A stretch of DNA of 64,000 nt from Ranitomeya imitator (taxonomy: Eukaryota). The notes under the pieces are model-generated. The model was not told the origin of the DNA and did not search any database. It saw only the letters and a program-made list of their open reading frames with translations. The position numbers and the translations under genes are program-made. Shown here piece after piece: positions 40,801 to 63,910 of this stretch. The stretch is taken from NCBI RefSeq assembly GCF_032444005.1, contig NC_091288.1, forward strand, positions 210,614,001 through 210,678,000. Direction: 5' to 3'. The stretch's first letter is position 1; the number at the start of each line of letters is the position of its first letter.

Positions 40801-43800
40801 CAGCGCCATTTATGAATCCATTTCCACAAGTTTTTGGTGTAAACCGATCCCCCGAAATTGACAAATGACATACAAACAGAAGGTATCTTTTTTCTGCAAT
40901 TTATTGGTTTTAATAATTGCCGAGAAAGTGTCCTTGGTTATTATAGAGTAGGACTAAACGCCTATAAAAGTGCCGCAAACAAGAAGAGGAATTCTTACCA
41001 CGTGCTCCACAGAGGCGCCTTTACGGAGGATGATGGCATCTGCAAAATCAGGCCGCTCTGTGGATGAAGAGGGAGATAAGATCACAGGTTCTCACTGCTG
41101 GTGGCAGCAAGTGTTCATTTCCCCACAGCGCCTCCACAGGGAACATGAAGCATTGCAGAGTTCCCAGTGAATTCACTCATCGGTTCTTGTCACGCATTAA
41201 GGTCAGAGCAAAAGGAGCTTATGTATAGTCCACTCAGTAAAGGTGGAAGGGAACTTAATTAACCCTTACTAGATAGTTCAGACATAAAAAAAGCATCCAA
41301 CTGGCTGGGGAGAGAGTAAAACATCATTACCTCCTCGCTTCTTAGTGTAGATACAGGTAAGTGCCAAATATTCCCATAACATTTCCAGTAAATAGTCCAG
41401 GTTCAGATTCATTCCACAACTGAAAAAGAAAAAGCCAGAGAGGGATGGGACGCGAGAAAAAGCCAGAGAGGGATGGGACGCGAGAAAAAGCCAGAGAGGG
41501 ATGGGACGCGAGAAAAAGCCAGAGAGGGATGGGACGCGAGCAAAAGCCAGAGAGGGATGGGACGCGAGCAAAAGCCAGAGAGGGATGGGACGCGAGAAAA
41601 AGCCAGAGAGGGATGGGGCGTGAGCAAAAGCCAGAGAGGGATGGGGCGCGAGAAAAAGCCAGAGAGGGATGGGACGCGAGAAAAAGCCAGAGAGGGATGG
41701 GACGCGAGAAAAAGCCAGAGAGGGATGGGACGCGAGAAAAAGCCAGAGAGGGGGCGTGGGAAAAGCCAGAGAGGGGGCGTGGGAAAAGCCAGAGAGGGAT
41801 GGGATGCGAGAAAAAGCCAGAGAGGGATGAGACACGGGAAAAAGCTAGAGAGGGATGGGATGCGAGAAAAAGCCAGAGAGGGATGAGACACGGGAAAAAG
41901 CTAGAGAGTGATGGGATGCGGGAAAAGCCAGAGAGGGATGGGACGCGGGAAAAAGCTAGAGAGGGATGGGATGCGGAAAAAGCTAGAGAGGGATGGAATG
42001 CGGGAAAAGCCAGAGAGGGGGCGTGGAAAAAGCCAGAGAGGGGGCGTGGAAAAAGCCAGAGAGGGGGCGTGGAAAAAGCCAGAGAGGGGGCGTGGAAAAA
42101 GCCAGAGAGGGGGCGTGGAAAAAGCCAGATAAGGATGGGATGTCAGAAAAGCCATAGAAGACTCAACTTCTCACCTGATGACCACGCTGTGTGGCTGCCG
42201 GGCCAGTCTGTCCACCTCCTCCATGGAGATCTGATCTATTTTATTATACACCTATAGATGATATATGGGGAGGACAATAAGGGGGTTACTGAACAGAGCA
42301 ATACCAACTCCTCCATACTACTATCTGTCACATCAAAACCCTGTAGAATATAATAATAAATGGGTCCTCCGTGCAGATACGGCCCAATCGGTGTGAAAGG
42401 AGACGTGCTGAATATTTCTCATCTACTTACATACAGACACGGCATGTACACCCTGTTCCCCACAATGACATCTATGAAGTCATCCGGGCTGCAATCCTCC
42501 CGAAACAGCACCTCGGCGTTGAACATTTCTGGTGAAAAGCTCATTAAGGTCCAATCTATAGGTTGCGGTGGGTGAATGTATGGTTTAGGTGTATGCAGCT
42601 CCCCAGCAATAATGATACATGAAGGATTCTAATGCAGAGACCAATCATGGATCATAGAAATCCTCTACTTCCCATCCTTTGTATTGTGCAAAGATGGCTG
42701 CCGTCAGATAGAACCCCGTACTGTCAGTCACCATTCTCTAGGACCATAACGTTTAGGGGCAGGATCCGAGGATCTGTATGGCAGGACCACCGTGCACTCA
42801 GCCTCCTCCACTATATGGACAGATACATTGCGGCAAGCAGGAAGGATACTGTATTCGTGCAGAATGAGCTGTACCAGCTTCTCGGAGCACTGGGTCAGGG
42901 GGAGAGTCGAGTTGAACGAGATGCCGCCTCCTTTCTTGGGCTAGCAATAAATTAAAAAAAAGAAAATTACAACAGTGTGAATGAGGAAGCGCTATAAGTG
43001 CGAAACGGCCATCGCCGATGTAGAATCTTGTTTCGGCATGGAATAATCAAGCATTATTGGCGAGTGGCGCCACTTTATGCAGAAATTCTACTACTATACC
43101 AGAGCAGAAACTTATCTATTTATGATATGGAGCAAAAAAAATAAAAAGGAAAGAAGTGACAATTTCTTTGCTTCAAATTTTGGCACAGTTTTTTTTTCTC
43201 TTTCTACAACATTTTTCTAAAAATGCAGCATATTAAGTTGCCCATGTTTCGTCAGGATCCACTGACAAGCTAATAGGGCGATTATTATTTTTTGCTCCGC
43301 TGTATGGTCCCTGTGAGGATAAGCGGCAGCAGCGGCATCCAGGCACCGCTCATCAAATTCAGTCCAGAAATGTTTGGCAACAACTAAGAAATCACGCGTG
43401 AAACCCACCGATCGGTTCACTCAACGCTTACATTACATCTACGGACCCCGAACTTTGTGTAATGGGATCTATCTATATATACATTATTATACTGGGAGGA
43501 GATTAGTAAGAAAATAGTCAAAATTACGCAAAAAAAAAAAAAAAAAAGTCAGCTCCATGAACCCCATATTCCTTCTCAGTACCCCCGACCTTACGAGAAC
43601 TGCAGACCCCCGTGACAATGTATTTTCCAATCACTTACCTTAAAGTATATATTGGGCTTTTCCTTGTTCAGTCGTATACCCACAGACTCCAGCTCTTTCT
43701 CCAATAAGGATCTGGTGAAAAGAAAGTCACGACAGTGAGCGTACGATAGGAGTGCCCACCACGTGCCAGCAGGGCGTGATCTGGTGCCCGCCGCGGACTG

Positions 43801-46800
43801 CTCACCTCTGGACTTCACCTTTCGTGGCATCCAGCATCATAATGACCACGTCCGATGTCCGAGCGACAGCAATGACCTGGCGACCTCTGCCCTTCCCTAC
43901 AGGGGGATATGGTATAGGGTGCATTATGGACGATGCAGCGTGCCCCGTTCATGCAGAGCATCACAGGCGATTATCAGGAGCACCGGGGTCCTGGTCTGTG
44001 AACGCAAGAGCTAGCCCTCACCTTGCGCTGCACCTTCGATAATTCCCGGCAGATCCAACAGCTGGATGTTCGCTCCTTTGTACTGAAAGCACAGAAATGT
44101 ATCACGGACGGCCCAAACCACAGGTGCTTTCCCCAGTTTATATGTATAAAGAGCTAAAGCAGAGCTCTGCTTGTTGTCAGTGAATGGGGACATTCAGAAG
44201 TTCATTCAGTGGCTTTACGGTATCTAATACTTCTAATTTAACCCCTTTAATGACCGTCGATATCAGTTAAGGGTACTTATTCCTCAGCGCCGCTTTTTAA
44301 CGGCGCTGAGAAATAAGGGTATAGCGCCCCCCCCCCCAGCGTCAGAAAATCTCTGGGGTCTCCGAGAGAGAACATGATCCAAACTGGTTTTTACAGTCTC
44401 CTGTCATGTGATCGCTGCTATTCAGTGAATAACGGAGACCCCATTTTTTTTTCTTTTGAAGATTGATTTACAGTTCATTTCTCTCTCCCCTGAATTGATC
44501 TAACATACCAATGGAGAGCGAAATCGGAGGCACCGACTATTGCGGATCCCTGCATAGATTTTTTTGGGATGTCCAACAACCTAACCTAATGTGTTGTAAC
44601 CATGGATTCAAAATGCTCACTATACCCCTGGAAAAAATCCTTGAGGGGTGTGGTTTCCAAAATAAGGTCACATGTGGGGGGGGGGGGGGGGGGTTTACAC
44701 TGTTTAGGCGCATCAGGGGGGGCTACAAACACAACATGGGGCCCGCCATTGATTCACAAAGTCAAATGGCGCTCCCTCCCTTCTGAGCTCTGCCGTGCGC
44801 CCACATAGTAGTGTACCCCCACATACGGGGTATCGGCGTACTCAGGAGAAACTGCACAACAAACGTTGTGGCCCCTTTTTTTCCTGTTACCCTTGTGAAA
44901 GTAAAAAAGTTTGGGTCTAAAATAATTTTTTGTGTGAAAATAGTTAAATGTTAATGTTTTCCTTACACATTGCTTCAGTTCCTGTGAAGCACCTGAAGGG
45001 TTAATAAACTTCTTGAATGTGGTGTTGAGCACCCGGAGGGGTGCAGTATTTAGAATGGTGTCGCTTTTGGGTACCTTCTGTCATATAGACCCCTCGTAGT
45101 CACTTAAAATGTGAGGTGGTCCCTAAAAAAAATGGGTTTGTAAATTTTGTTTCAAAATGAGAAATCGCTGGTCAACTTTTAACCCTTATAACTACCTAAT
45201 AAAAAAATTTCCAAAATTGTGCTGATGTAAAGTAGACGTGCGGGAAATGTTTGTTATTAACTATTTTGTGTGATATGACTCTCTGATTTAAGGGCATAAA
45301 AATTAAGAGTTTAAAAATTGCAAAATTTTCTACATTTTGGCCAAATTTCCTTTTTTTTCCCATAAATTAGCGAAGTCATATTGAAGAAATGTTACCACTA
45401 TCATAAAGTACAATATGTCACGAGAAAACAATCTCAGAACCAGTGGGATTCGGGAGTTATTAGCACATAAAGTGACAGCGGTCAGAATTGTAAAAAATTG
45501 GCTTGGCCATTAAAGGTCAAAATTGGTTCCGTCACTAAGGGGTTAATAAAAGCAAGCAGAGATCTTGAAAACGGTACGGTAAAAAATAAATAAATAAAAT
45601 CATGCAGAAGTCCAATCATTGTCACCTCTATCACTCCCGGGATGCAGGTCAGCGTGGTGAACTCATAGGAGGCAGCCTCACTGGCGGTGGAGGTCATCAG
45701 ACTCAAAAACGTGGACTGGAAAAAAAAAACATTAAAATTCCAAAAATCATTCAAAGAACACTGTAAATAGTTTTATCATCATACTCCAGTCACATCCAGA
45801 GCTGCATTCACAATTCTGTGCGGTGCTCAGCGGTTTATGAAACATCCATAGATTCTGAATAGGGGGCAGCACTGAGCAAGGGCGACTAAGGATCTAGTCA
45901 GTCTCCTCCTAACTGGTCGGCTGTGACTGGAGAAATACCGGGCATCTGTACCCTGTGACGTAACACATCACATTCACAGTGGATAGATGATCTGTTAGTG
46001 GGTGAAATACCCCTTTAAGATGCCGGATGACACTGCTGCCCCCAAGAGGCCAAGTGCGGGATATACCAGGAGACGCCACATCCTTCACTATGCAGGACCA
46101 TAGCGAGCACTATAGGACGTCATCACTGCGGTGCGGCTCTGCACAATGCAGGTGGCAGCCAACATTTAGGATGCAGCTCTGGGTGTGATCAGGTCTGCTC
46201 TATGGCAGATTGATGCTGTTATGCAGATTTAGAGTACAGCGGTCACAAGGGATCAGGGGGGTTACCGACCTTACCCACAGAGGGGAACCCGATCAGCGCC
46301 ACTCGGGCATCTCCAGATTTCATCACATCGAAGCCCTCGCCTTTGGCGGCAGCAGATTTGGAGGGCTCCAGGAGCTGGGCTCTGTACTTGGCGAGCTTCG
46401 CCTTCAGCAATCCCAAGTGATACTCAGTGGCTGGAAGACAAGGAGGAAGAGATCATAGGCGGCCATGTACTAACCAGTGTAGCATCCCCCCACTAACAAC
46501 TACAGGGTCCTCCCCACTACACCCCCCGTATAACCAGTGCAGGGTCCTCCCCACTAAATCCCCCTATAACCAGTGCAGGGTCCTCCCCACTACACCCCCC
46601 GTATAACCAGTGCAGGGTCCTCCCCACTAAATCCCCCTATAACCAGTGCAGGGTCCTCCCCACTACACCCCCCGTATAACCAGTGCAGGGTCCTCCCCAC
46701 TACACCCCCCGTATAACCAGTACAGGGTCCTCCCCACTACACCCCCCTGTATAACCAGTACAGGGTCCTCCCCACTACACTCCCCTGTATAACCAGTACA

Positions 46801-48476
46801 GGGTCCTCCTCACTACACCCCCCGTATAACCAGTGCAGGGTCCTCCCCACTACACCCCCCATATAACCAGTACAGGGTCCTCCCCACTACACCCCACATA
46901 TAACTAGAGCAGGGTCCTCCCCACTACACCCCCCATATAACCAGTACAGGGTCCTCCCCACTATATCCCCCTATAACCAGTACAGGGTCCTCCCCACTAC
47001 ACCCCCCATATAACCTGTGCAGGGTCCTCCCCACTACACCCCTCTATAACTAGTGCAGGGTCCCCCCATTATACCCCTCTATAACCAGTGCAGGGTCCCC
47101 CCCACTATATCCCCCTATAACTAGTACAGGGTCCTCCCCACTACACCCCCCATATAACCAGTACAGGGTCCTCCCCACTATATCCCCCTATAACCAGTGC
47201 AGGGTCCTCCCCACTATATCCCCCTATAACCAGTACAGGGTCCTCCCCACTACACCCCCCATATAACCAGTACAGGGTCCTCCCCACTACACCCCCCATA
47301 TAACCTGTGCAGGGTCCTCCCCACTACACCCCTCTATAACTAGTGCAGGGTCCCCCCATTATACCCCTCTATAACCAGTGCAGGGTCCCCTCCACTATAT
47401 CCCCCTATAACTAGTACAGGGTCCTCCCCACTACACCCCCCATATAACCAGTACAGGGTCCTCCCCACTATATCCCCCTATAACCAGTGCAGGGTCCTCC
47501 CCACTATATCCCCCTATAACCAGTACAGGGTCCTCCCCACTACACCCCCCATATAACCTGTGCAGGGTCCTCCCCACTACACCCCTCTATAACTAGTGCA
47601 GGGTCCCCCCATTATACCCCTCTATAACCAGTGCAGGGTCCCCCCACTATATCCCCCTATAACTAGTACAGGGTCCTCCCCACTACACCCCCCATATAAC
47701 CAGTACAGGGTCCTCCCCACTATATCCCCCTATAACCAGTGCAGGGTCCTCCCCACTATATCCCCCTATAACCAGTGCAGGGTCCTCCCCACTACACCCC
47801 CCGTATAACCAGTGCAGGGTCCCCCCCACTACATCCCCCTATAACCAGTACAGGGTCCCCCCCACTATATCCCCCTATAACCAGTGCAGGGTCCCCCCCA
47901 CTACACCCCCCGTATAACCAGTACAGGGTCCCCCCCACTACATCCCCCTATAACCAGTACAGGGTCCCCCCCACTATATCCCCCTATAACCAGTGCAGGG
48001 TCCCCCCCACTACACCCCCCGTATAACCAGTACAGGGTCCCCCCCACTATATCCCCCTATAACCAGTGCAGGGTCCCCCCCACTACACGCCCCGTATAAC
48101 CAGTGCAGGGTCCCCCCCACTACATCTCCCTATAACCAGTACAGGGTCCCCCCCACTACACCCCCCTATAACCAGTACAAGATCCCCCCCACTATATCCC
48201 CCTATAACCAGTACAGGATCCCCCCCACTATATCCCCCTATAACCAGTACAGGAGCCCATTCCTCCCCTCTATACCCCCCTATTTGTATCCCCTTTATAG
48301 TGACACATGCAGGGTCCTCCCCACTATTTGCAGGGTCACCTGACCATATCCCCTTATAGTGACACATGCAGGGTCCCTCACTCCCCAGTGCAGCCCCTTC
48401 CCCCCATCTCACCCTTGTTCTTCTGGGTCCTGGCGATCTCCTTCTCGATCTCGGAGATCTTCTCCAGGATCCCCAT
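37751..48476 (-). CDS. DRG2: Developmentally regulated GTP-binding protein 2, complete gene span, 13 exons, 1095 nt = 364 aa
   Basis: [21 protein letters not shown] start; GFPSVGKS (G1), DLPG (G3), NKID (G4); TGS-domain C-terminus [10 protein letters not shown]; exon lengths sum to 364 codons plus stop. Confidence 0.97.
38005..38887. repeat. Minisatellite, 86-bp then 78-bp units (ccagagctgcactcactattctgctggtgcagtcactgtgtacatac...)
   Basis: ORF-track starts recur every 86 bp. Confidence 0.95.
39061..39114 (-). CDS. DRG2: DRG2 exon 12 ([18 protein letters not shown])
   Basis: 54 nt, cag/gtgagt. Confidence 0.95.
39231..39852. repeat. Minisatellite, 37-bp unit (ctgccaacatgcacagccccagctctcctctcctcct)
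   Basis: Direct reading. Confidence 0.95.
40085..40490. repeat. Degenerate about 60-bp tandem repeat (gattcagcagcagcagggaggagggacagtgagggg...)
   Basis: Direct reading. Confidence 0.8.
40999..41057 (-). CDS. DRG2: DRG2 exon 11 ([20 protein letters not shown])
   Basis: 59 nt, cag/gtaaga. Confidence 0.95.
41331..41419 (-). CDS. DRG2: DRG2 exon 10 ([29 protein letters not shown])
   Basis: 89 nt, cag/gtaatg. Confidence 0.95.
41427..42130. repeat. Purine-rich minisatellite, 28-bp unit (aaaaagccagagagggatgggacgcgag), filling DRG2 intron 9
   Basis: Direct reading. Confidence 0.95.
42175..42251 (-). CDS. DRG2: DRG2 exon 9 ([26 protein letters not shown])
   Basis: 77 nt, tag/gtgaga. Confidence 0.95.
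42431..42528 (-). CDS. DRG2: DRG2 exon 8 ([13 protein letters not shown]...[10 protein letters not shown])
   Basis: 98 nt, cag/gtaagt. Confidence 0.94.
42529..42849 (-). other. DRG2: U12-type (minor spliceosome) GT-AG intron, DRG2 intron 7
   Basis: 5' site GTATCCTTCC; branch-like CCTTAAT (42543-42549) about 14 nt upstream of CAG. Confidence 0.88.
42850..42940 (-). CDS. DRG2: DRG2 exon 7 ([12 protein letters not shown]...LVQLILHEY)
   Basis: 91 nt, tag acceptor, U12-type donor gtatcctt. Confidence 0.94.
43639..43711 (-). CDS. DRG2: DRG2 exon 6 ([24 protein letters not shown])
   Basis: 73 nt, cag/gtaagt. Confidence 0.95.
43806..43896 (-). CDS. DRG2: DRG2 exon 5 ([30 protein letters not shown])
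   Basis: 91 nt, tag/gtgagc. Confidence 0.95.
44022..44082 (-). CDS. DRG2: DRG2 exon 4 ([21 protein letters not shown])
   Basis: 61 nt, cag/gtgagg. Confidence 0.95.
44242..45542. mobile_element. Non-autonomous piggyBac-like element (1.3 kb) in DRG2 intron 3
   Basis: TTAA TSD both sides; TIR CCCCTT(T)AATGAC / GTCACTAAGGGG; no transposase ORF. Confidence 0.8.
45626..45715 (-). CDS. DRG2: DRG2 exon 3 ([30 protein letters not shown])
   Basis: 90 nt, cag/gtgaca. Confidence 0.95.
46270..46430 (-). CDS. DRG2: DRG2 exon 2 ([16 protein letters not shown]...GFPSVGK)
   Basis: 161 nt, cag acceptor, donor gtcggt (frame requires this donor). Confidence 0.92.
46470..48250. repeat. C-rich minisatellite, 35-37-bp unit (taaccagtgcagggtcctccccactacacccccgta), filling DRG2 intron 1
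   Basis: Direct reading. Confidence 0.95.
48413..48476 (-). CDS. DRG2: DRG2 exon 1
   Basis: ATG at 48476, 64 nt, gtgaga donor. Confidence 0.95.
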
Positions 48477-52739: not shown

Positions 52740-54897
52740 AGGGTACGTGGCCGCGATCCGGAGTTGCTGCGGGTTGGATTCTGCGTACTTGTGCAACGTC
52801 AAACCCGCAGAGTCCAGACGTTACAGAATAGAAGAAATCCCATGCCCACTATGCGTCCACAGACACTCGCGGAGACGGACATGCAGCGCGTCTTTCCATA
52901 CGCTAGTCTCCGCAAGAGAAAATTTCCCCCATGTATTGAACACGGTGAACACATGCGGAATCACCTGCGTTCAATAGACGGCAGAGCTGTGGCCGCAGCG
53001 GACATGTGCTACATCCAAAGCGCTGCCACTTCCAGATTGTGTGCACCCGACCTGATACGTCATTGTGGAGCCTTTTGCTTGGACTGCGCCTAGTTTGTAG
53101 CTGATTCCACCAGGAAAATGACACATGCATTTCCCACCACCCATCAATCGCTTTCGGCCACATTCACACATTGAGTATTCGGTCAGTATTTAACATCAGT
53201 ATTTGTAAGCCAAAACCAGGAGTGGGTTTCGCCGTTATTCTCGCAGAAGCTCCACCACCGGCGTTTTTCCCTCTAACCTCTGGAGCAGCCCAATGACTAA
53301 TCGTGCCCTTCTTTTTGACCGCTTTACCAACCCCGCAGCGGTTAAAAGAAGTGAAATGAGATGAAACATGTGCATTATGTTCAGTTTATGGGGGTGGAAG
53401 GCGCAGTGTGCACACAGGCCCAACAATTAAAACAGACCCAGAGCTGTCACTTCATTTGAGAAATTGGGCAAAGGCCCATGCCCTTGTATCCGTCCACTTC
53501 CAGGCTGATCAAGCCTCCTCCCATCATAGATTTTTTTTTATTATATTTTCTTTATTGTGCATTTGCTGCAATGAAATATCAAATCGGTTCTTGTGCTCCA
53601 GTTGCTGCCAGAACTCAATGCATTGCGATGTGCCCTAGTGCAAGAGATGCTCTAGATTTAACCCTACATTTACCTGGCAGTATTCTGCCCCACTCTATGG
53701 TATTATATATATAAAAAAAAAGAAAAATCAATTTGACCTCTCCATCCATTCTAATCGGTGTAAATAACACATTGAAGCAACAAGTCAGAAGTGTAACAGC
53801 AAGAGTTTCTCTTTGACGGGGAATTAAAAATAAAAAAAAGTTAAAGTGTTTTTTCTCAACAAATGTGCAGCGACTGTGGAATAGATGAGAAGTCTGAAGC
53901 TTTTTTTTTTTTTTGCTTGCGGAGAATCAGAGAGAAAAGCCAGCCACGCTTTAATCCATGACACATAGCAAATACGACAACAACTCCAAAAAAACAGGCT
54001 CCTCGCAAAAATAAAAAAAAATGGTCACTTGCGTCAACAGTCCACCTCGCCGCTGGTCATTTTTTATTACCCATTCAGCTGTGGTGAGCACAGTCTGCCA
54101 GCCGGTGGCGCTGTTCCCACACTTTGCATTCAGACCCTTGAGAAGCCCGGATATCTAGAATTCATTAAAATGAGACTGAACAAGCAGGGGGTGCAACGCG
54201 TCTCCGTCACCCGTTTACGTATACCCTGGAAAAATAGGCCGCCGCAAAATACGGAACTGAATCTTCAGCAGCTCGGTCGGCTCTCAGGAGGCATCCATAG
54301 AATTTTTTTTTATACTTTGATTAAATATATGTGTATTTATAATATATATTTATAGATATATATAAAAAAAAAAATCTGACATTTCCCATTTTCAATGTGA
54401 AAACGGAGAAACGTATTGCAGTCCGAAAACCTTTTCCTTTTTGACATTGGGACCGGAGGACGGGGTGGTGGTGGTGGGGGAAAGTTTTGCTAATTGGTAT
54501 TAGGAATGGGGTAGATCCCCCACAGATGGAGTGTGAAGCTCGTATGTTCAGGGGTGTTTCCGCAGCACCCACCCCCACCGTGATGCAATAATCCATATTC
54601 TGGTCCAATGGGATGCATTTAGGCAAAGGGGTCCATGTTAGTCTTGGAGGGATAAAGCTGAAGGCGCAGTAATGTCAAGCAGGAAAAAAAAAAAAAAATT
54701 AAAACAAAAAACCCAGCGGATTAAAATAAAACCCGCGTACAGAGTGGATGCCGCTGCACGCGTCATTGCTTTAACACTCATACATTCTTCTCAGAGTCGC
54801 TGGGACAGTTAGGAAACGGCAGGTTTCGGTGCGGACAGCTCCGCTCTGTCGGTGCGACGGTGGTGATGGCGGTGGCAGCGGCGAGGTCAGGCTCCTG

Positions 54898-54961: not shown

Positions 54962-57900
54962 CTGCAAGGTGAAGAGAAACAGAAGACTCATTGAAGTGAG
55001 TGGAAACAGCCTTATTTACAGACACTGGGTGCCCAAGTCCAATGCTTTGCACAGCAGAAGATTCGTTACAGTAGTCATTAAGTGATGGCAATACACCTGC
55101 GCTGTGTGATGGAGATTGCCGTCACTGGTACTGTATTACATCGCCATATGGTGCCAAGTGCAATAAAACACTAGCAATACAACAGCGCCCTCTGGTGGTG
55201 CAAGTATATGAATTTTTTTTGCCTTTGACCATAACATTCTTCTTGCAGGAATGTCACTAGGAGCCCTGCAGCGCTCACCATTCTGAGCTCCGGTGATAAT
55301 AGTAACCCTCTATGGATGCCGCCGACTTCTGGAAGCAAATGTAGTAGAAGCCGGCAAAGGAAGCGCCGCTGATGTCTTTGATTGTGTGATCAGGCACCAG
55401 GAACTGTTCCTGCAGAGGAGAGAGAGGAAACCATGTAAACCCTAAATCGCATGGGGGGGGGGTCTATAATCTGCACCCATCTCGTTATAGACGGGGGGGG
55501 GGGGGGGGGGGGGTTATAACCTGCACCCTGCTCGTTATAGACGGGGGTGGGTATATAATCTACACCCCTCTCGATATAGACGGGAGGGGGGGGTTCTATA
55601 ATCTGCACCCATCTCATTATAGATGGGGGGGGGGGGGGGGGTGTTATAATCTGCACCCTGCTCGTTATAGACGGGGGTGGGTATATAATCTACACCCTTC
55701 TCGATATAGACGGGAGGGGGGGGGGGGGGGGTTCTATAATCTGCACCCATCTCATTATAGATGGGGGGGGGGGGGGTGTTATAATCTGCACCCTGCTCGT
55801 TAGTGACGGGGGTGGGTATATAATCTGCGCCCATCTCGTTATAGACAGGGGGGGGGGGTTATAATCTGCACCCTGCTTGTTATAGACAGGGGTGGGTATA
55901 TAATCTGCACCCTTCTCGTTATAGACGAGGGGGAGGTTGTCCATAATCTGCGCCCTTCTCGTTATAGACGAGGGGGGGGGGTGTCCATAATCTGCGCCCA
56001 TCTCGTTATAGACGAGGGGGGGGGGGGGTTGTCCATAATCTGCGCCCATCTCGTTATAGACGAGGGGGGGGTTGTCCATAATCTGCGCCCATCTCGTTAT
56101 AGACGAGGGGGGGGTTGTCCATAATCTGCGCCCATCTCGTTATAGACGAGGGGGGGGTTGTCCATAATCTGCGCCCATCTCGTTATAGACGAGGGGGGGG
56201 GGGGGTTGTCCATAATCTGCGCCCATCTCGTTATAGACGAGGGGGGTTGTCCATAATCTGCGCCCATCTCGTTATAGACGAGGGGGGGGTTGTCCATAAT
56301 CTGCGCCCTTCTCGTTATAGACGGGGGGGGGGGGGGGGGAGGGGGGGGGGGGTTGTCCATAACCTGCGCCCATCTCGTTATAGACGAGGGGGGTTGTCCA
56401 TAATCTGCGCCCATCTCGTTATAGACGAGGGGGAGGTTGTCCATAATCTGCGCCCATCTCGTTATAGACGAGGGGGGGGGGGGGGGGTTGTCCATAATCT
56501 GCGCCCATCTCGTTATAGACGAGGGGGGGGGGGGTGTTGTCCATAATCTGCGCCCATCTCATTATAGACGAGGGGGGGGGGGGGTTGTCCATAATCTGCG
56601 CCCATCTCATTATAGACGAGAGGGGGGGGGGGGGGGGGGGTGTTGTCCATAATCTGCGCCCATCTCGTCATAGACGAGGGGGGGGGGGGGTTGTCCATAA
56701 TCTGCACCCTTCTCGTTATAGACGGGGGGGGGATCTATAATCTGCACCCCTCTCGTTATAGACGGGGGTGTGTGTCTATAACCTGCACCCTTCTCGTTAT
56801 AGATGGGGGGGGGGGGGGGGTCTATAATCTGCACCCTTCTCATTATAGATGAGGGGGGTCTGGTCTTTTTAAGAAAGGTTACAGGAAAACGCACCTTCCA
56901 CCTCATGAAGACGTAATCGCCGGCTTTCAGTTCCTCGAATCCAAAGTCATCGGAATTAAAGGTTTTGGCGTACTGGTAGAAAGCCTGGAACTTCCCCTGT
57001 GTGGAGAGACGATGGGTCAGTGCCCAGGGGGGCAGAATACGAGCGGCGGAGAGTGACCGGCCCACATACTGCCCACGCTCACCCAGTGCTTCCTGTCCAC
57101 GTCCTCATCCGCGTCCCACTTTCTGGTTAAGAAGGGATGTTTTCTACTGATTATCTCCCCTTCAAAGAAGGTGGTGAGGGTCGGGTATTCCTGAAAAGAG
57201 GATGAAGGAGGGAATAAAGCAGATTCTATAGGTGGGAGCTGTAACACCAGACAAAGGGAAAGACGAGGCATCTCGCTGAGCTGGGCCAGAGGTGGCCGTC
57301 CATGTGTGATCCTCTCCATTCACTTCTATGGGAGTTCTGATAATTGCCAAGCAAGCATGCTCCCATAGAGGTGACAAGAGGTGAGCTTGGCGACCACCTC
57401 CTTACCTCCCCATGCTAGAGATAGACACGGGGTTTAGAAAAGAGGGATTCTCAGCCAGAAATATCCGAGATGGGAATAGCCCTTTAAAAAAAAGGGACAG
57501 TGCCGTCACAGAGGTGGAGGGACGACTAGAGACCCAGCTCCTAGGACAGCGCGCTATATGGTGGCCTGCAGCTTCCTGTACCCTGAGCGGTCCAGATGGC
57601 AGGATCACAGCCGTGCCCCCTCAAGGTCTCCTAAAATGCACACACGAGGAAAGAGGCGCCCAGTGCCCCAAGCTGCAAAAAGGAAGAGCTTATGGGGTCA
57701 CCGAGGGGCTTCCTGATCTATATTGTGACCCTCCGAACCTGGCGGGGGTACATGGACGGACGAACAAAGCAATCTGTGCTGTAAGGAGAGTCCGCCTATG
57801 ATTAAAAATAATCAGCCCATGCCTTTAAACAAAAAATTAAAAAAACGCCCCTTTAATAATCATGGCCGCCATTTCCCTACTATTGGTCCAGCCATCTAGA

Positions 57901-60190
57901 GCAACCCCCACGGCACGCAGGAGAAGGGCGCCCCACGGCTGTCAGTAATGGGGTCACTCACCTCAGTAAGGCCTTTTATCTTCAAGTATCCACACAGATA
58001 AGCGTTCTCCATGTCCACGTGCTGCGGAGCAGAAAAAGGGTTAATAGCACCCGGGCCCCTATGACAACACATCCTGTCCACTGGGGCGCTGCACCCCAGT
58101 CACCCACATCATGTCCCAGGATCTCTGCTTGCTGTAATGTATCGTCTACACTGGATACAACTGTAACGACCCCACAGCTGTGAACATGTATAATTCCACA
58201 CTCTGAAAACGACTGCTAAACCAGTGATTGGCTGCAGCGGTCAGATGATTGATAGACAGGGCATCATCACAGCGGCACCAATAGATTTAAAGGATAAGAG
58301 ATGTTTATAGGGAAATCCAGACATTCCCGCGGATTGTGACGTTCCCGAGTGGCTTCGATTCATAGAAATCTTGAAAATGATGAAGAACCGAAAGAAGGAA
58401 TGTGTTAGAAAGCCGAAAAAAAAAAAAAAAACCCAACAACTTGCTGCCTTCAGCAGAACATTCACTCCTGAACTTCTGTTACAATGTATCAGTCACATGT
58501 GCGGATTGTGCAGGACTCCGCGGTGACGGATCGTCGGCTCCGGAGTCCTGTGGATCATCACTATGCAGCAGAGGATAGGTGCGAGGACAGCGGGGGGCTA
58601 CACAGGGAGAACAGCAGCCATGGAACGGCACAGAGGAGGCTTCTCGCCCTACAGGGGGCAGTATACACGTGTGATGGAGGCTGTCAGGTAACGCTATCAG
58701 CCTGCCCAGAGGATTGCCAAGGATCAGAGGGGTCCGGCAGCTGCTCATCTCCGAGATCGCTGCAGCCCAGGCACAGGGGGCTGCGAGCACCTGGATAATG
58801 GTGGTGATGGCAGCTGAAGACCCCCTGCCCCTGGCCCCAATAACGCTTTAAGGCAACAACAAGGGGGCAATCTGTGCAGTCTCCAAGGAAAGTGAGGGGT
58901 GCAAGATAAGAAGGGAGGGGGGCCACAACACCAGGGGGCAAAATATTGAGTAGGGGAACAGGAGCAGAAAAAGGAAGAACACCCGAGCCCCTCCACCATC
59001 TGGACGAGCACCCAGGCCCCCCCACCCGAAGAAGCACCGGGCCCCTCGCCCGGAGAACACCCTCGCCCGGAGAAGCACCGGGCCCCCCCCCCCACCCTCG
59101 CCCGGAGAAGCACCGGGCCCCCCCCCCCACCCTCGCCCGGAGAAGCACCGGGCCCCCCCCCCCACCCTCGCCCGGAGAAGCACCGGGCCCCCCCCCCCAC
59201 CCTCGCCCGGAGAAGCACCGGGCCCCCCCCCCCCACCCTCGCCCGGAGAAGCACCGGGCCCCCCCCCCCACCCTCGCCCGGAGAAGCACCGGGCCCCACC
59301 ACCCTCGCCCGGAGAACACCCTTGCACGGAGAAGCACCGGGCCCCACCACCCTCGCCCGGAGAAGCACCGGGCCCCACCACCCTCGCCCGGAGAAGCACC
59401 GGGCCCCACCACCCTCGCCCGGAGAGGCACCGGGCCCCCCCCACCCTCGCCCGGAGAGGCACCGGGCCCCCCCCACCCTCGCCCGGAGAGGCACCGGGCC
59501 CCCCCCCCCACCCTCGCCTGGAGAGGCACCGGGGACCCCACACGCTCGCCTGGAGAGGCACAGGGCCCCCCCCCTCACCTGGAGAAGCACCGGGCCCCCC
59601 ACCACCCTCGCCTGGAGAGGCACCGGGGACCCCCCACCCTCGCCTGGAGAAGCACCGGGCCCCCCCACCACCCTCGCACGGAGAAGCACCGGGGACCCCC
59701 CACCCTCGCCTGGAGAAGCACCGGGGACCCCCCACCCTCGCCCGGAGAACACCCTCGCCTGGAGAAGCACCGGGGACCTCCCCCCTCGCCTGGAGAGGCA
59801 CCGGGGACCCCCCACCCTCGCCTGGAGAGGCACCGGGGACCCCCCACCCTCGCCTGGAGAAGCACCGGGCCCCCCACCACCCTCGCACGGAGAAGCACCG
59901 GGGACCCCCCACCCTCGCCTGGAGAAGCACCGGGCCCCCCACCTGGACGAGCACCGGGCCCCCACGCCGCACAGCCGGTGTCTCGCCCCTCCGTGCAGGC
60001 AGCCCCCGCTCACCTGCAGCACCACCTCCACATCGTACGAGTTGCCTTTGCTCTTCTGGTGCCCCCGGAACTTGGAGCCGCTGTACAGCAGGGTGGTGGC
60101 CACCCCGGGCTGCTGCGTGTTGATGGGAGGTGGCGGGATGAGGGACGAGGAGCCGGAAGCCGTGCTGCTAGCCTCGGTTCGGACCGGCAT
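54898..60190 (-). CDS. GID4: GID complex subunit 4 (Pro/N-degron recognin of the CTLH E3), complete gene span, 6 exons, 642 nt = 213 aa
   Basis: MPVRTE...[59 protein letters not shown] match recalled vertebrate GID4. Confidence 0.96.
55185..55201 (-). promoter_or_regulatory. Candidate CTCF site in GID4 intron 5
   Basis: Minus strand GCACCACCAGAGGGCGC matches CTCF core. Confidence 0.6.
55279..55409 (-). CDS. GID4: GID4 exon 5 ([23 protein letters not shown]...HRSSEW)
   Basis: 131 nt, cag/gtgagc. Confidence 0.95.
55455..56850. repeat. Minisatellite with variable poly-G run per unit (ataatctgcgcccatctcgttatagacga-Gn-ttgtcc), GID4 intron 4
   Basis: Direct reading. Confidence 0.93.
56895..56996 (-). 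CDS. GID4: GID4 exon 4 ([13 protein letters not shown]...YVFMRWK)
   Basis: 102 nt, cag/gtgcgt. Confidence 0.95.
57083..57190 (-). CDS. GID4: GID4 exon 3 ([14 protein letters not shown]...DVDRKHW)
   Basis: 108 nt, cag/gtgagc. Confidence 0.95.
57962..58021 (-). CDS. GID4: GID4 exon 2 ([20 protein letters not shown])
   Basis: 60 nt, cag/gtgagt. Confidence 0.95.
58985..59965. repeat. GC-rich minisatellite, about 30-33-bp unit (ccctcgcccggagaagcaccgggccccccca), GID4 intron 1
   Basis: Direct reading. Confidence 0.93.
60014..60190 (-). CDS. GID4: GID4 exon 1 coding part
   Basis: ATG 60190, 177 nt, gtgagc donor. Confidence 0.92.
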
Positions 60191-60544
60191 ATCCAGGGCC
60201 GGCCCCCCTGCCGATGGGCACAGCTCGTCCCGCAGGGCTCGGCCGTTTCTCCGCTCCCGGCCTGAGCGCCTGGGCCTCTTCACCACCGAGCGCGGCGATT
60301 GGCCGACAGACGCTCCACCCACACTCTCACCTGCGATACGATTGGTCGAAGTGCCAAGCGTTGAATGACGGGAGATGTAGTTCTCGTGTCCAGGAGCGGA
60401 GGCTGTGATTGGTTGGAAGAGGGATGTGACGTAGGAGGAGAGATACCAGGGTCACCAGCAAGATGGCTGCGCCCAGAGGAGGAGGCGCCGGGAGGATCAG
60501 CATGGCGCCGCTCACCTGCTCCGGGCGGTGTGTACTGTGAGCAG
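60191..60544. promoter_or_regulatory. GID4/ATPAF2 bidirectional CpG-rich promoter
   Basis: Divergent starts 60190(-) and 60995(+); ATTGG/CCAAT at 60297, 60341, 60408; TGACGT 60427; CAAGATGGC 60459; probable ATPAF2 non-coding exon donor GCAG|gtacat at 60544. Confidence 0.7.
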
Positions 60545-60994
60545 GTACATTGGCAGCAGTGGGTGGCCCTAAGAGTCGCCCTGTCCTCCCTTTTTATAAC
60601 TGGGTGTCATCACAAATCTTGCACCTCTCACCTTCAGCCTCTGTTGCTGGCTGCTGAGTGAGTCACCTGAGCATCTCTCAGTGAGCTCCCTCTGTCCAAT
60701 GCAAGTTCCTTCCTCTCCTTTTTCTGATCTATAACTACAGACCTCATCAAAGTTGAATGTGATCTGTAAAAGCCAAATGGAGCAAAATTTGTCCTGAAAC
60801 CCAATTGCAAACTTGATTTTTAACCGCAGAAATAAATGCGTTTCAATAGATGTCTGCGCAGGTGGACATCCCCTTTAAATGTAAAATAGCCGCTTACTTT
60901 AAAGACTAGACAATTCTTGGTTTCTGTTCACACTCAGCATTTTGTCCTCTTTTATTTCAGTTTTCTAAACTAAGTGCAAACCCCCTCTGTCAGG

Positions 60995-61118
60995 ATGCTG
61001 CCGATCCTTCACCGTATGCTGTCCATGCGGCCTGCGGGTGTGAACGGAGGCCTGTGCCGCAAACTGCGCTCCCTGGACAGCGTCGTCACACAGAGGAGGT
61101 CCTATGCCCCCCCGACTG
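60995..61118 (+). CDS. ATPAF2: ATP synthase mitochondrial F1 assembly factor 2, first coding exon (mitochondrial presequence ending RRSY|APPT)
   Basis: ctgtcag|G-ATG acceptor, ACTG|gtgagt donor; RSYAPPT matches recalled human RAYAPPT; Arg-rich presequence with R-3 cleavage motif; head-to-head with GID4 as in human. Confidence 0.88.
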
Positions 61119-61437
61119 GTGAGTGCCGAGATGTGACCCCCATAGATGAGCGGGTGCTTCTTATATAGGAAACACCTCTTATTATAAATTCTCTCCATTC
61201 TCAAGAATCACTTTCATTTGTTTATTGCTTGTTGCCAAGGTTACCAACCACCTCCCCATATTCCAGTGTATTTAACGGTACAATAAATGGCGTCATTCAA
61301 ATCGATAACTCGCCCCTCAAAAAACAAAACCTCATATGGATATGAGACTGGAAGAGTAAAAAAAAGTTCCAGCTCTTCTAAAATGGGGAAGAAAAAAATA
61401 AAAGCGCAAAAATGAAAAATCACCTAGTCTGGATTAA

Positions 61438-61566
61438 AGGGGTTGTGCAAGACACGCCTGGTAATGGAGCTCAGCTGCAATACCACATACAACCTGTGAA
61501 CAGGGGTGGTGCTGTTTATCTAAACATTTTATATGTGACGTACGAGTCTGATCCTGGACAATCCCT
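61438..61566. mobile_element. Degenerate Kolobok/T2-type MITE
   Basis: TTAA-AGGGGTTGT ... ACAATCCCT-GTAA. Confidence 0.5.
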
Positions 61567-61644
61567 GTAATAAAATCACTTATGTTTATGTGAATTATAA
61601 CTTGTATCCGATCTAGTTTCTGTTTTGTTTTTTTGTTGCTCTAG

Positions 61645-61689
61645 AAAGAAAGAAGTTTTATAAGAGTGTCAGCATCTCCCAAGGTGAAG
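61645..61689 (+). CDS. ATPAF2: ATPAF2 second coding exon (ERKKFYKSVSISQGEG); gene continues beyond window
   Basis: 45 nt, tag/gtgagc, phase 1; matches recalled human ERKRFYQNVSITQGEG. Confidence 0.92.
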
Positions 61690-61850
61690 GTGAGCAGCTC
61701 GCACTTATATTCTGCCTCCAAGGATTGAGATATATATAGAAAGATCCACAGACAAGTGTTACATATAAGTCTACCTTGAGTCACCACAAAGGGGAGCTCA
61801 TTGCAGACTGGGTTTTTATTAGGTTCAAAACAAGATCAGTAAGCACTGAG

Positions 61851-63910
61851 CTCCCTCTAGTGGTGGCTGCCCCGCGCTCCCTCTAGTGGTGGCTGCACTG
61901 AGCTCCCTCTAGTGGTGGCTGCCCCGCGCTCCCTCTAGTGGTGGCTGCACTGCGCTCCCTCTAGTGGTGGCTGCCCCGCGCTCCCTCTAGTGGTGGCTGC
62001 CCCGCGCTCCCTCTAGTGGTGGCTGCACTGCGCTCCCTCTAGTGGTGGCTGCACTGCGCTCCCTCTAGTGGTGGCTGCCCCGCGCTCCCTCTAGTGGTGG
62101 CTGCACTGCGCTCCCTCTATTGGTGGCTGCACAGCGCTCCCTCTAGTGGTGGCTGCCCCGCGCTCCCTCTAGTGGTGGCTGCGCCGCGCTCCCTCTAGTG
62201 GTGGCTGCCCTGCGCTCCCTCTAGTGGTGGCTGCACAGCGCTCCCTCTAGTGGTGGCTGCCCCGCGCTCCCTCTAGTGGTGGCTGCCCCGCGCTCCCTCT
62301 AGTGGTGGCTGCCCCGCGCTCCCTCTAGTGGTGGCTGCGCCGCGCTCCCTCTAGTGGTGGCTGCCCCGCGCTCCCTCTAGTGGTGGCTGCCCCGCGCTCC
62401 CTCTAGTGGTGGCTGCCCCGCGCTCCCTCTAGTGGTGGCTGCCCCGCGCTCCTTCTAGTGGTGGCTGCCCCGCGCTCCCTCTAGTGGTGGCTGCCCCGCG
62501 CGCCCTCTAGTGGTGGCTGCCCCGCGCTCCCTCTAGTGGTGGCTGCGCCGCGCTCCCTCTAGTGGTGGCTGCGCCGCGCTCCCTCTAGTGGTGGCTGCGC
62601 CGCGCTCCCTCTAGTGGTGGCTGCGCCGCGCTCCCTCTAGTGGTGGCTGCGCCGCGCTCCCTCTAGTGGTGGCTGCGCCGCGCTCCCTCTAGTGGTGGCT
62701 GCGCCGCGCTCCCTCTAGTGGTGGCTGCGCCGCGCTCCCTCTAGTGGTGGCTGCGCCGCGCTCCCTCTAGTGGTGGCTGCCCCGCGCTCCCTCTAGTGGT
62801 GGCTGCGCCGCGCTCCCTCTAGTGGTGGCTGCCCCGCGCTCCCTCTAGTGGTGGCTGCCCCGCGCTCCCTCTAGTGGTGGCTGCCCCGCGCTCCCTCTAG
62901 TGGTGGCTGCCCCGCGCTCCCTCTAGTGGTGGCTGCCCCGCGCTCCCTCTAGTGGTGGCTGCCCCGCGCGCCCTCTAGTGGTGGCTGCCCCGCGCTCCCT
63001 CTAGTGGTGGCTGCGCCGCGCTCCCTCTAGTGGTGGCTGCGCCGCGCTCCCTCTAGTGGTGGCTGCGCCGCGCTCCCTCTAGTGGTGGCTGCGCCGCGCT
63101 CCCTCTAGTGGTGGCTGCGCCGCGCTCCCTCTAGTGGTGGCTGCGCCGCGCTCCCTCTAGTGGTGGCTGCGCCGCGCTCCCTCTAGTGGTGGCTGCCCCG
63201 CGCTCCCTCTAGTGGTGGCTGCGCCGCGCTCCCTCTAGTGGTGGCTGCCCCGCGCTCCCTCTAGTGGTGGCTGCGCCGCGCGCCCTCTAGTGGTGGCTGC
63301 CCCGCGCTCCCTCTAGTGGTGGCTGCGCCGCGCTCCCTCTAGTGGTGGCTGCGCCGCGCTCCCTCTAGTGGTGGCTGCGCCGCGCTCCCTCTAGTGGTGG
63401 CTGCGCCGCGCTCCCTCTAGTGGTGGCTGCGCCGCGCTCCCTCTAGTGGTGGCTGCGCCGCGCTCCCTCTAGTGGTGGCTGCGCCGCGCTCCCTCTAGTG
63501 GTGGCTGCGCCGCGCTCCCTCTAGTGGTGGCTGCGCCGCGCTCCCTCTAGTGGTGGCTGCGCCGCGCTCCCTCTAGTGGTGGCTGCGCCGCGCTCCCTCT
63601 AGTGGTGGCTGCGCCGCGCTCCCTCTAGTGGTGGCTGCGCCGCGCTCCCTCTAGTGGTGGCTGCGCCGCGCTCCCTCTAGTGGTGGCTGCCCCGCGCTCC
63701 CTCTAGTGGTGGCTGCGCCGCGCTCCCTCTAGTGGTGGCTGCCCCGCGCTCCCTCTAGTGGTGGCTGCGCCGCGCTCCCTCTAGTGGTGGCTGCGCCGCG
63801 CTCCCTCTAGTGGTGGCTGCCCCGCGCTCCCTCTAGTGGTGGCTGCGCCGCGCGCCCTCTAGTGGTGGCTGCCCCGCGCTCCCTCTAGTGGTGGCTGCGC
63901 CGCGCTCCCT
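61851..63910. repeat. 26-bp tandem array, 79 full units plus a partial (ctccctctagtggtggctgc[gc/cc]cgcg), in an ATPAF2 intron; each unit carries a CTCF-type motif on the minus strand
   Basis: Register checks: 62501, 62969, 63281 and 63853 are all 61851 + 26n. Confidence 0.97.

What the first reader, a model, noticed from the sequence alone, without database searches (positions are those of the whole stretch)
61851..63910. 79-copy, single-orientation tandem array of CTCF-type motifs beside the GID4/ATPAF2 promoter
Seen: 79 exact 26-bp units with no indels over 2054 bp. On the minus strand each reads CCACCACTAGAGGGAGCGCG, matching the CTCF core CCASYAGRKGGCRS except C to A at one tolerant position; four units (62501, 62969, 63281, 63853) have the full consensus GGGCGC. 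Variation is almost confined to the 7-bp linker (cactgag, cactgcg, cacagcg, ccccgcg, cgccgcg), trending to more CpG rightwards, while the motif part is nearly invariant (two variant units seen). A 26-bp period is about 2.5 helical turns, so neighbouring sites alternate faces of the helix. Known: CTCF binding is orientation-dependent for cohesin blocking and CpG-methylation-sensitive, and clustered CTCF sites in tandem repeats form strong boundaries. Inference: a minisatellite-built, copy-number-variable, methylation-switchable super-anchor/insulator 1.3-3.4 kb from a bidirectional housekeeping promoter, oriented towards GID4-DRG2-MYO15A.
Basis: partly seen in the sequence, partly recalled or inferred. 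Interest (0 to 1): 0.82.

Follow-up and report, generated by a model that had tools for sequence, protein, structure and literature searches.

The report
Transposon-seeded minisatellite of 79 CTCF-like motifs
A frog ATPAF2 intron holds a real tandem array of 79 near-identical 26-base units, each carrying a strong CTCF-type motif in one orientation, but the unit comes from a dispersed hairpin repeat in a minisatellite-rich region, so it is most likely an ordinary repeat expansion whose insulator role is possible but untested.

Summary
There are 79 in-register 26-bp units with no indels at 61851-63910. Every unit carries a CTCF-type core on the minus strand; four units match the full consensus. 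Variation sits mainly in the 7-bp linker, and CpG count rises rightwards.

Corrections:
- The array lies inside ATPAF2, 733 bp downstream of its first coding exon. It is about 1.5 kb from the GID4/ATPAF2 divergent promoter.
- The four "perfect" units look like one mutation copied by block duplication.
- 75 of 79 units have no CpG at the core positions known to be methyl-sensitive.
- A 26-bp period is shorter than a full CTCF footprint.

Origin:
- The unit is the right arm of a 32-bp inverted repeat at the array's left edge.
- It belongs to a dispersed repeat family. One solo copy sits at 11444-11511, and 43-50 contigs per run in two related species carry it.
- The window holds 12 large minisatellites.
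- A relative about 5% diverged shares the locus and the first unit.

My best reading is a transposon-seeded, recombination-driven minisatellite with a passenger CTCF motif. CTCF binding is plausible but could not be tested: no ChIP, methylation or Hi-C data were reachable.

The scan's first readers noted at least 13-16 similar co-oriented CTCF-like arrays elsewhere in this genome. All are unchecked, and the recurrence deserves a genome-wide test.

The parts
61851..63910 (-). Minisatellite of 79 units of 26 bp plus a 6-bp partial unit. Each unit holds a CTCF-type core on the minus strand. G+C is 72% and CpG observed/expected is 0.73-0.85 over most of the array, lower at its left end.
   Evidence: TRF; unit table; weight-matrix scan; CpG profile
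61778..61809 (+). Left arm of a 32-bp inverted repeat. It carries a weak plus-strand CTCF-like site at 61781-61799 (11.1 bits).
   Evidence: Local alignment 25/32 against the reverse complement of 61837-61868; weight matrix; single-strand DNA hairpin -23.5 kcal/mol, z -4.7
61810..61836 (.). 27-bp A+T-rich spacer (hairpin loop) between the two arms
61837..61868 (-). Right arm of the inverted repeat: 14 bp of flank plus the first 18 bp of unit 1. This is the segment that was amplified into the array.
   Evidence: The second unit's linker, cactgag, equals the flank just before unit 1
62501..62526 (-). First of four variant units (also at 62969, 63281, 63853) with the full consensus core CCACTAGAGGGCGC. 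Each is followed by a run of the commonest unit.
60995..61118 (+). ATPAF2 first coding exon (ATG to GTGAGT donor; peptide ends ..RRSYAPPT). The array starts 733 bp downstream, inside the following intron.
   Evidence: ORF, sequence, peptide word. Identity rests on a recalled human ATPAF2 N-terminus and on conserved synteny with GID4; no Pfam hit.
60014..60190 (-). GID4 exon 1 coding part. Downstream exons lie near 57977-57997, 57104-57172, 56898-56981 and 55290-55376.
   Evidence: ORFs; Pfam Vac_ImportDeg E 9.6e-11 and 6.9e-4 on exons 3 and 2; peptide words
60298..60412 (.). Core of the divergent GID4/ATPAF2 promoter: three ATTGG (inverted CCAAT) boxes at 60298, 60341 and 60408 in 58-72% G+C DNA
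   Evidence: sequence; composition
59018..59963 (.). Second G+C-rich (about 80%) minisatellite, 32-35-bp unit, starting about 50 bp after the GID4 exon 1 donor. The promoter is therefore flanked by G+C-rich arrays on both sides.
   Evidence: TRF; composition
11444..11511 (-). Solo copy of the same dispersed repeat family, with an exact consensus CTCF core at 11466-11479 (19.8 bits)
   Evidence: aligns over about 70 nt with the family consensus rebuilt from contig overhangs
55185..55198 (-). Solo exact-consensus CTCF core (21.1 bits), about 100 bp downstream of the GID4 exon that encodes ..YYHRSSEW
54095..54113 (+). Nearest strong plus-strand CTCF-type motif to the left of the array (17.6 bits). 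It is convergent with the array and would enclose GID4 and the promoter.

Best explanation
This is a transposon-seeded minisatellite in the intron after ATPAF2's first coding exon.

Origin. A dispersed repeat carrying a short inverted repeat (32-bp arms, 27-bp loop) sits at 61778-61868, and each arm holds a CTCF-like sequence. The right arm plus 7 following bases was amplified head-to-tail into 79 units. I infer the mechanism to be replication slippage at the hairpin followed by unequal exchange.

Later change. Blocks of 12-20 units were re-duplicated. The linker drifted from cactgag to cgccgcg through A/T-to-G/C changes only. That is what GC-biased gene conversion would give in the recombination-rich, minisatellite-dense regions of frog chromosomes.

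The motif. The CTCF-type motif is a passenger inherited from the parent repeat. It was neither built nor clearly maintained by selection in place.

Consequence if the array is unmethylated (inferred, not shown). CTCF could occupy at most about every second unit. It would then form a one-sided barrier to cohesin arriving from the promoter/GID4 side.
For: Shown:
- The array is real.
- It is one of 12 large minisatellites in 64 kb. This matches the published picture of Xenopus tropicalis, where portions of transposable elements expand into minisatellites in recombination-rich, G+C-enriched extended subtelomeres (PMC10794172).
- The inverted repeat at the left edge matches 25/32 and folds at -23.5 kcal/mol, z -4.7. 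None of the other 11 arrays has such a flank.
- The unit belongs to a dispersed family. In each of three runs, 43-50 contigs match up to 61870 and then continue into a shared non-array sequence. The solo copy at 11444-11511 aligns with that consensus, including 13/13 bases of the downstream block.
- Only 8 distinct substitutions exist. All four that reached high frequency are A/T-to-G/C changes in the linker.
- The four full-consensus units fit a repeated block pattern.
- CTCF-motif enrichment in tandem repeats does not guarantee binding: human alpha-satellite arrays enriched for motifs gave no DiMeLo-seq signal (10.64898/2026.07.18.739380).

Inferred: the slippage and unequal-exchange mechanism, gene-conversion bias, and the absence of a selected function.
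Against: - Substitutions are over-represented in the linker (5 of 8 in 7 of 26 positions, binomial p 0.037). All 3 linker A/T positions changed, against 1 of 7 in the motif (Fisher p 0.033). This is a weak hint that the motif is protected.
- The locus and first unit, and probably an array, are shared with a relative about 5% diverged. The array may therefore be old and homogenised rather than young.
- CpG observed/expected of 0.73-0.85 would fit germline hypomethylation, as at bound CTCF sites, though youth or gene conversion explain it as well.
- First readers flagged at least 13-16 co-oriented CTCF-like arrays in 754 windows of this genome. That is more than my rough chance estimate of about 1e-3 per array would give.
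- The parent transposon family was not classified.
Confidence: 0.6

Rival explanations
1. The array is a working, CTCF-occupied clustered anchor. Many co-oriented sites raise the chance that at least one is bound at any moment. They stall cohesin coming from the GID4/DRG2 side, and strength is tunable by copy number and chromatin state.
For: - All 79 units score 12.7-19.5 bits, 77 of them at least 16.5 bits, in one orientation.
- A convergent plus-strand site at 54095 would close a roughly 8-kb loop around GID4 and the promoter.
- There is a marginal excess of change in the linker.
- The locus is shared with a relative.
- High CpG is retained next to an active-looking CpG-rich promoter.
- Xenopus TAD borders use the vertebrate CTCF motif in convergent orientation (PMC8270788).
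- Tandem CTCF arrays such as Dxz4 act in an orientation-dependent way (10.1101/165340).
Against: - No occupancy, methylation or contact data exist for this species in the tools.
- The 26-bp spacing is below a full footprint.
- The motif is inherited from a dispersed repeat.
- The stronger variant unit did not sweep the array.
- Dense CpG arrays in gene bodies are usually methylated in vertebrates (established knowledge).
- An 11-kb-scale housekeeping gene pair has no obvious need for such a barrier.
Confidence: 0.3
2. The array serves meiosis rather than interphase insulation. In this reading it is a promoter-adjacent G+C-rich minisatellite, possibly CTCF-bound, that tethers a default (promoter) double-strand-break hotspot to the chromosome axis or recruits break-promoting proteins. 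The comparison is with mouse mo-2 minisatellites and CTCF sites bound by HORMAD1 and IHO1.
For: - In mouse, mo-2 minisatellite arrays accumulate MEI4, and CTCF sites are bound by axis proteins (10.1101/2024.03.06.583329).
- The divergent promoter here is flanked on both sides by G+C-rich minisatellites.
- Linker changes are all towards G/C, as gene conversion near a hotspot would give.
Against: - This is pure analogy, with no meiotic data for any frog here.
- G+C enrichment increases away from the promoter, not towards it.
- The other ten minisatellites in the window, leaving aside this array and the 59018-59963 array that flank the promoter, are not promoter-adjacent.
Confidence: 0.05
3. The copy number or the perfect regularity is an assembly artefact, that is, a collapsed or mis-polished repeat.
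For: Short-read contigs cannot span the array. Both species' contigs stop in the first unit, so the figure of 79 is unverified.
Against: - The array has an ordered internal variant map with a clear left-to-right gradient and block structure, which polishing errors would not create.
- The unit and its junction are seen independently in runs of two species.
Confidence: 0.03

Closest known systems
Frog subtelomeric minisatellites derived from portions of transposable elements (Bredeson et al. 2024, PMC10794172)
   Same: A short piece of a dispersed repeat is amplified head-to-tail in a region packed with other minisatellites. G+C enrichment accompanies the expansion.
   Different: The published examples are a 52-bp piece of SINE/tRNA-V plus CR1 and Kolobok fragments in Xenopus. 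Here the seed is one arm of a 32-bp inverted repeat of an unclassified family, and the unit happens to be a CTCF-type motif. Whether this window is subtelomeric is unknown.
DXZ4 / Dxz4, FIRRE and ICCE macrosatellites (PMC3218863, PMC3491370, PMC6125249, 10.1101/165340)
   Same: These are copy-number-variable tandem repeats in which every unit carries a co-oriented CTCF motif. Orientation decides the direction of long-range contacts, and binding depends on chromatin and methylation state.
   Different: Their units are about 3 kb or more with one site each, so spacing allows full occupancy, and CTCF binding is demonstrated. Here the unit is 26 bp, shorter than a footprint, and binding is untested.
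CTCF-motif enrichment in human gamma satellite, rDNA and some alpha-satellite higher-order repeats (10.64898/2026.07.18.739380)
   Same: Tandem repeats whose monomer carries CTCF motifs beyond a G+C-matched expectation.
   Different: Monomers are about 171-215 bp or larger. That study also shows that motif-rich alpha-satellite arrays gave no DiMeLo-seq binding signal, which is a caution that applies here.
Transposon-borne CTCF sites (mouse SINE B2; PMC8136502, and Schmidt et al. 2012 recalled)
   Same: A mobile or dispersed element carries a ready-made CTCF motif and spreads it through the genome.
   Different: B2 spreads by retrotransposition as single sites. Here a single insertion was amplified locally into a tandem array.
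Clustered CTCF boundaries (Kentepozidou 2020, cited in PMC7566886; Pcdh/HOXD tandem sites, PMC10703910)
   Same: Several nearby co-oriented sites act together to strengthen a boundary.
   Different: Those clusters have 2-10 sites spaced hundreds to thousands of bp apart and of independent origin. They are not 79 identical sites at 26-bp spacing.

Membership tests
Minisatellite / VNTR | Head-to-tail repeats with a unit of about 10-100 bp over 0.5-20 kb | tested here: met
   Period 26, 79.3 copies, 2061 bp, 0% indels
Minisatellite / VNTR | Internal variant-repeat map with polarity or block duplications | tested here: met
   9 variants. The left third is heterogeneous and the right two thirds are homogenised. 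A full-consensus unit followed by a run of the commonest unit recurs four times. CpG gradient rho 0.61.
Minisatellite / VNTR | Copy number varies among individuals | not testable with these tools
   Only short-read contigs were available, and they stop in the first unit
Transposon-derived tandem repeat | The unit is homologous to a segment of a dispersed repeat found elsewhere in the genome | tested here: met
   43-50 contigs per run share the unit followed by a common non-array continuation. The solo copy at 11444-11511 aligns with it.
Transposon-derived tandem repeat | The parent element is classifiable (terminal repeats, target-site duplication, coding capacity) | tested here: inconclusive
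   Only a 32-bp inverted repeat with a 27-bp loop is seen. No further copies were found in the window by blastn. No frog repeat library was available.
Functional CTCF binding site / insulator | Match to the vertebrate CTCF core motif | tested here: met
   77 of 79 units score at least 16.5 bits and 4 are exact consensus.
Functional CTCF binding site / insulator | CTCF (and cohesin) occupancy in vivo or binding in vitro | not testable with these tools
   No ChIP-Seq run was listed for this DNA, and the species has few public runs
Functional CTCF binding site / insulator | Site unmethylated or accessible | not testable with these tools
   Only the indirect CpG observed/expected of 0.73-0.85, which youth or gene conversion also explain
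Functional CTCF binding site / insulator | Spacing lets each site be occupied (full footprint about 40-50 bp, recalled) | tested here: not met
   The period is 26 bp, so at most alternate units could hold a fully engaged protein
Functional CTCF binding site / insulator | Site conserved in related species or under constraint | tested here: inconclusive
   A relative about 5% diverged shares the flank and first unit, and has contigs of units with 4 differences in 72. The motif-versus-linker contrast gives p 0.03-0.04 on 8 events.
Methylation-switchable CTCF site (H19/IGF2-type) | CpG at the methyl-sensitive core positions (2 and 12 of the core; recalled from Wang 2012 and Hashimoto 2017) | tested here: not met
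   The core is CCACTAGAGGGAGC in 75 units. Position 2 is followed by A and position 12 is A. Only the 4 variant units have CpG at position 12. CpGs lie 3' of the core and in the linker.

The most novel reading that the evidence does not exclude
In this frog lineage a dispersed hairpin (foldback-type) repeat carrying CTCF motifs repeatedly seeds co-oriented CTCF-motif minisatellites across the genome. These arrays would be CTCF-occupied on alternate units. They would then act as copy-number-tunable, one-sided barriers to loop extrusion, or as axis anchors next to promoter recombination hotspots. That would be a minisatellite-scale counterpart of DXZ4, and this array would be one instance, sitting 1.5 kb from a housekeeping divergent promoter.
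Probability: 0.15. Interest if true: 0.75.

Novelty: new member of a known kind. Interest (0 to 1): 0.4.

Why it matters
If the array is only a by-product, it is still a clean worked example of how a frog minisatellite is born from one arm of a transposon hairpin and then drifts towards G+C.

If it is bound, it would be a natural dose series of identical CTCF sites at sub-footprint spacing beside a simple housekeeping promoter. That would help test how boundary strength scales with site number, spacing and methylation.

The larger question is genome-wide. First readers flagged more than a dozen similar arrays in about 48 Mb of this genome. A census against a G+C-matched null would show whether CTCF motifs are truly over-represented in frog minisatellites, and whether one repeat family accounts for them.

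Tried and rejected
- Searched public runs holding 61200-61930 with the library word ChIP-Seq: none was listed. Without the word filter only short-read contigs of two organisms were served, and none is on record as RNA. Occupancy, expression and copy number therefore could not be read.
- Exact 21-mer of the unit in metagenome contigs: no match.
- blastn of both flanks, the two solo sites and the promoter repeat against the window: no further copies beyond the array itself. A four-way alignment of the solo sites and the array edge showed shared sequence only around the core. The family link to 11444-11511 became clear only with the consensus from contig overhangs. The site at 55185 could not be tied to the family (score 24).
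- Asked whether a flanking inverted copy of the unit is a general feature of this window's minisatellites: it is not, as only this array shows one.
- Pfam on the ATPAF2 first exon, the DRG2 first exon and the 1682-residue ORF gave nothing. ATPAF2 and DRG2 rest on short peptide words and synteny, and MYO15A is unverified.
- Literature: neither the X. tropicalis CTCF/Rad21 ChIP and Hi-C paper (PMC8270788) nor the frog genome paper (PMC10794172) mentions tandem arrays of CTCF motifs. Searches for CTCF with amphibian satellites or Xenopus transposons found nothing relevant.
- Rejected as explanations: a coding repeat, because CTAG gives a stop on both strands in every unit and no ORF of 45 or more codons is listed inside the array. 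G-quadruplex or R-loop former, because there is one GGG per 26 bp and no G/C strand skew (from the unit sequence).
- The summed contig depth over the units, about 1300 times single copy in one run, is not used as a copy number, as the tool warns.
Full report
**1. The observation**

The stretch 61851-63910 is a perfectly phased minisatellite. Tandem Repeats Finder gives period 26, 79.3 copies, 97% matches and no indels.

Cutting from 61851 yields 79 units in nine variants. The two commonest differ only in the linker (gcgccgcg x40, gccccgcg x26).

- 71 units score 16.5 bits (p about 1.2e-6).
- Four units score 19.5 bits.
- Two units score 18.65 bits.
- Two weakened units score about 13 bits.

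Even with the array's own 72% G+C as background, the per-array chance of such a site is about 9e-4. CpG per unit rises rightwards (rho 0.61, p 2.5e-9).

**2. Where it sits**

- GID4 runs on the minus strand. Its exon 1 coding part is 60014-60190, and further exons lie near 57.98, 57.1, 56.9 and 55.3 kb. Pfam Vac_ImportDeg gives E 9.6e-11.
- DRG2 lies further left, also on the minus strand, with exon words at 48456, 45635 and 44044.
- Three inverted CCAAT boxes at 60298, 60341 and 60408 mark the divergent promoter.
- ATPAF2's first coding exon is 60995-61118 on the plus strand and ends in a GTGAGT donor.

The array therefore lies inside ATPAF2, 733 bp into the intron after that exon and about 1.5 kb from the promoter core. 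It is not upstream of either gene.

A second G+C-rich minisatellite (59018-59963) starts about 50 bp after the GID4 exon 1 donor, so the promoter is bracketed by two such arrays. The window contains 12 large minisatellites in all.

**3. Where the unit came from**

The left edge is an inverted repeat. 61778-61809 pairs with 61837-61868 (25 of 32) around a 27-bp A+T-rich loop. As single-stranded DNA it folds at -23.5 kcal/mol, z -4.7. The right arm is the first unit with its preceding flank. The second unit still carries the flank's own cactgag as its linker. None of the other 11 arrays has a flanking inverted copy of its unit.

Contigs of four public runs were laid on 60000-62010. In three of the four runs, 43-50 contigs match up to 61870 and then continue into a shared, non-array sequence. 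Others match 61784-61864 on the opposite strand, as a palindromic element would.

The solo site at 11444-11511 aligns with the consensus rebuilt from those overhangs over about 70 nt. This includes a 13/13 block downstream of the motif.

The 26-bp unit is therefore a piece of a dispersed, hairpin-bearing repeat that already carried the CTCF-type motif. Two unchecked first-reader notes elsewhere in this genome describe foldback transposons with a CTCF pair at the hairpin tip, which fits. I could not classify the family.

**4. Age and relatives**

The best-holding runs belong to 'organism A'. A second species label, 'organism B', has an orthologous contig from 60414 to 61877 with 74 mismatches and 34 gap letters in 1450. 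It stops in the first unit exactly where organism A's own contig stops. Organism B also has contigs that begin with 72 nt of units differing at 4 positions.

The locus and the first unit, and probably an array, therefore predate the split of two species about 5% apart. Copy number cannot be read from contigs.

**5. How the array evolved**

Relative to the flank-like unit there are only eight distinct substitutions.
- The four that reached high frequency are all A/T-to-G/C changes in the linker, taking cactgag to cgccgcg.
- The remaining linker change is a rare T-to-A seen in 2 units.
- The three in the motif part are rare: one T-to-G in 4 units and two singletons.

The four full-consensus units are each followed by a run of the commonest unit, which indicates one mutation copied by block duplication.

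The published model for frog genomes is that high recombination drives tandem-repeat expansion and G+C gain (PMC10794172). The pattern here fits that model.

The excess of change in the linker is marginal: binomial p 0.037, and Fisher p 0.033 on A/T positions. This is a hint of protection of the motif, not a demonstration.

**6.

In favour:
- The motif is strong and uniformly oriented.
- By the convergent rule, a minus-strand site faces lower coordinates, because cohesin meets the CTCF N-terminus first at convergent sites (PMC7566886). Here that means the promoter, GID4 and DRG2.
- A plus-strand site at 54095 (17.6 bits) would be its convergent partner.
- Frog TAD borders use the same motif convergently (PMC8270788).

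Against:
- A 26-bp period is below the roughly 40-50 bp full footprint of the 11-finger protein (recalled; modular binding by ZF3-7 plus flanking fingers is stated in 10.64898/2026.07.18.739380). At most alternate units could be fully engaged.
- The known methyl-sensitive core positions are not CpG in 75 of 79 units, so a direct methylation switch is not encoded in the core. Dense flanking CpG could still close the chromatin.
- Motif-rich tandem repeats are not necessarily bound, as human alpha-satellite arrays show.

No ChIP, methylation, Hi-C or long-read data were reachable for this species.

**7. Verdict**

The most likely reading (about 0.6) is a transposon-seeded, recombination-driven minisatellite whose CTCF motif is a passenger.

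A real CTCF-occupied clustered anchor remains a serious rival (about 0.3). A meiotic role by analogy with mouse mo-2 arrays and axis-bound CTCF sites is a long shot. An assembly artefact is unlikely given the ordered variant map.

**8. Recurrence in the genome**

The scan's first readers noted at least 13-16 other co-oriented CTCF-like tandem arrays in 754 windows of the same genome. All are unchecked. That is more than my rough per-array chance would predict.

A CTCF-bearing repeat family that seeds minisatellites would explain this most simply. The recurrence, rather than this single array, is what deserves a proper census.

**9. Comparison with known systems**

It works like, but is not shown to be, a small-unit counterpart of DXZ4/FIRRE-type CTCF macrosatellites. 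By origin it belongs with the transposon-derived minisatellites of frog genomes. I file it as a new member of that known kind.

Noticed in passing
window 59018-59963: A 32-35-bp minisatellite of about 80% G+C starts about 50 bp after the GID4 exon 1 donor. Together with the 26-bp array it brackets the divergent promoter with G+C-rich tandem repeats on both sides.
   Followed up: partly
window 120-1852, 6467-8069, 13371-14773, 17758-20068, 34440-35618, 38013-38889, 39232-39853, 41427-42158, 46503-48253, 55500-56858: Ten further large minisatellites (units 28-86 bp, 10-55 copies) lie in 64 kb, several inside DRG2 and GID4 introns. None carries a CTCF-type motif of 8 bits or more, except one weak hit (8.5 bits) in the 59018-59963 array listed above.
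   Followed up: partly
window 21354-26402 (-): An uninterrupted 1682-codon ORF with no Pfam domain. Its position left of DRG2 would fit the giant N-terminal exon of MYO15A, but this was not verified.
   Followed up: partly
window 55185-55198 (-) and 54095-54113 (+): Two strong solo CTCF-type sites (21.1 and 17.6 bits) lie at the 3' end of GID4, in divergent orientation to each other. The plus-strand one is convergent with the array.
   Followed up: no
window 60680-60830 and 61156-61563: Summed contig depth rises 20- to 200-fold over single copy in both species. These stretches of the ATPAF2 5' region and intron are therefore dispersed repeats.
   Followed up: no
window 60454-61419: A very small run of another sample (X3, 121 million letters) holds one 1000-nt contig at depth 53 covering exactly this stretch and nothing of GID4 exon 1. 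It looks like target capture or a promoter-enriched library rather than whole-genome data.
   Followed up: no
window 17758-20068: The 45-bp unit of this 51-copy array contains an internal A+T-rich near-palindrome (ctgtacatatataattatatacag).
   Followed up: no
window 55500-56858: A 43-48-bp array inside a GID4 intron in which every unit carries a run of 8-17 G. It has strong G-quadruplex potential on the plus strand.
   Followed up: no
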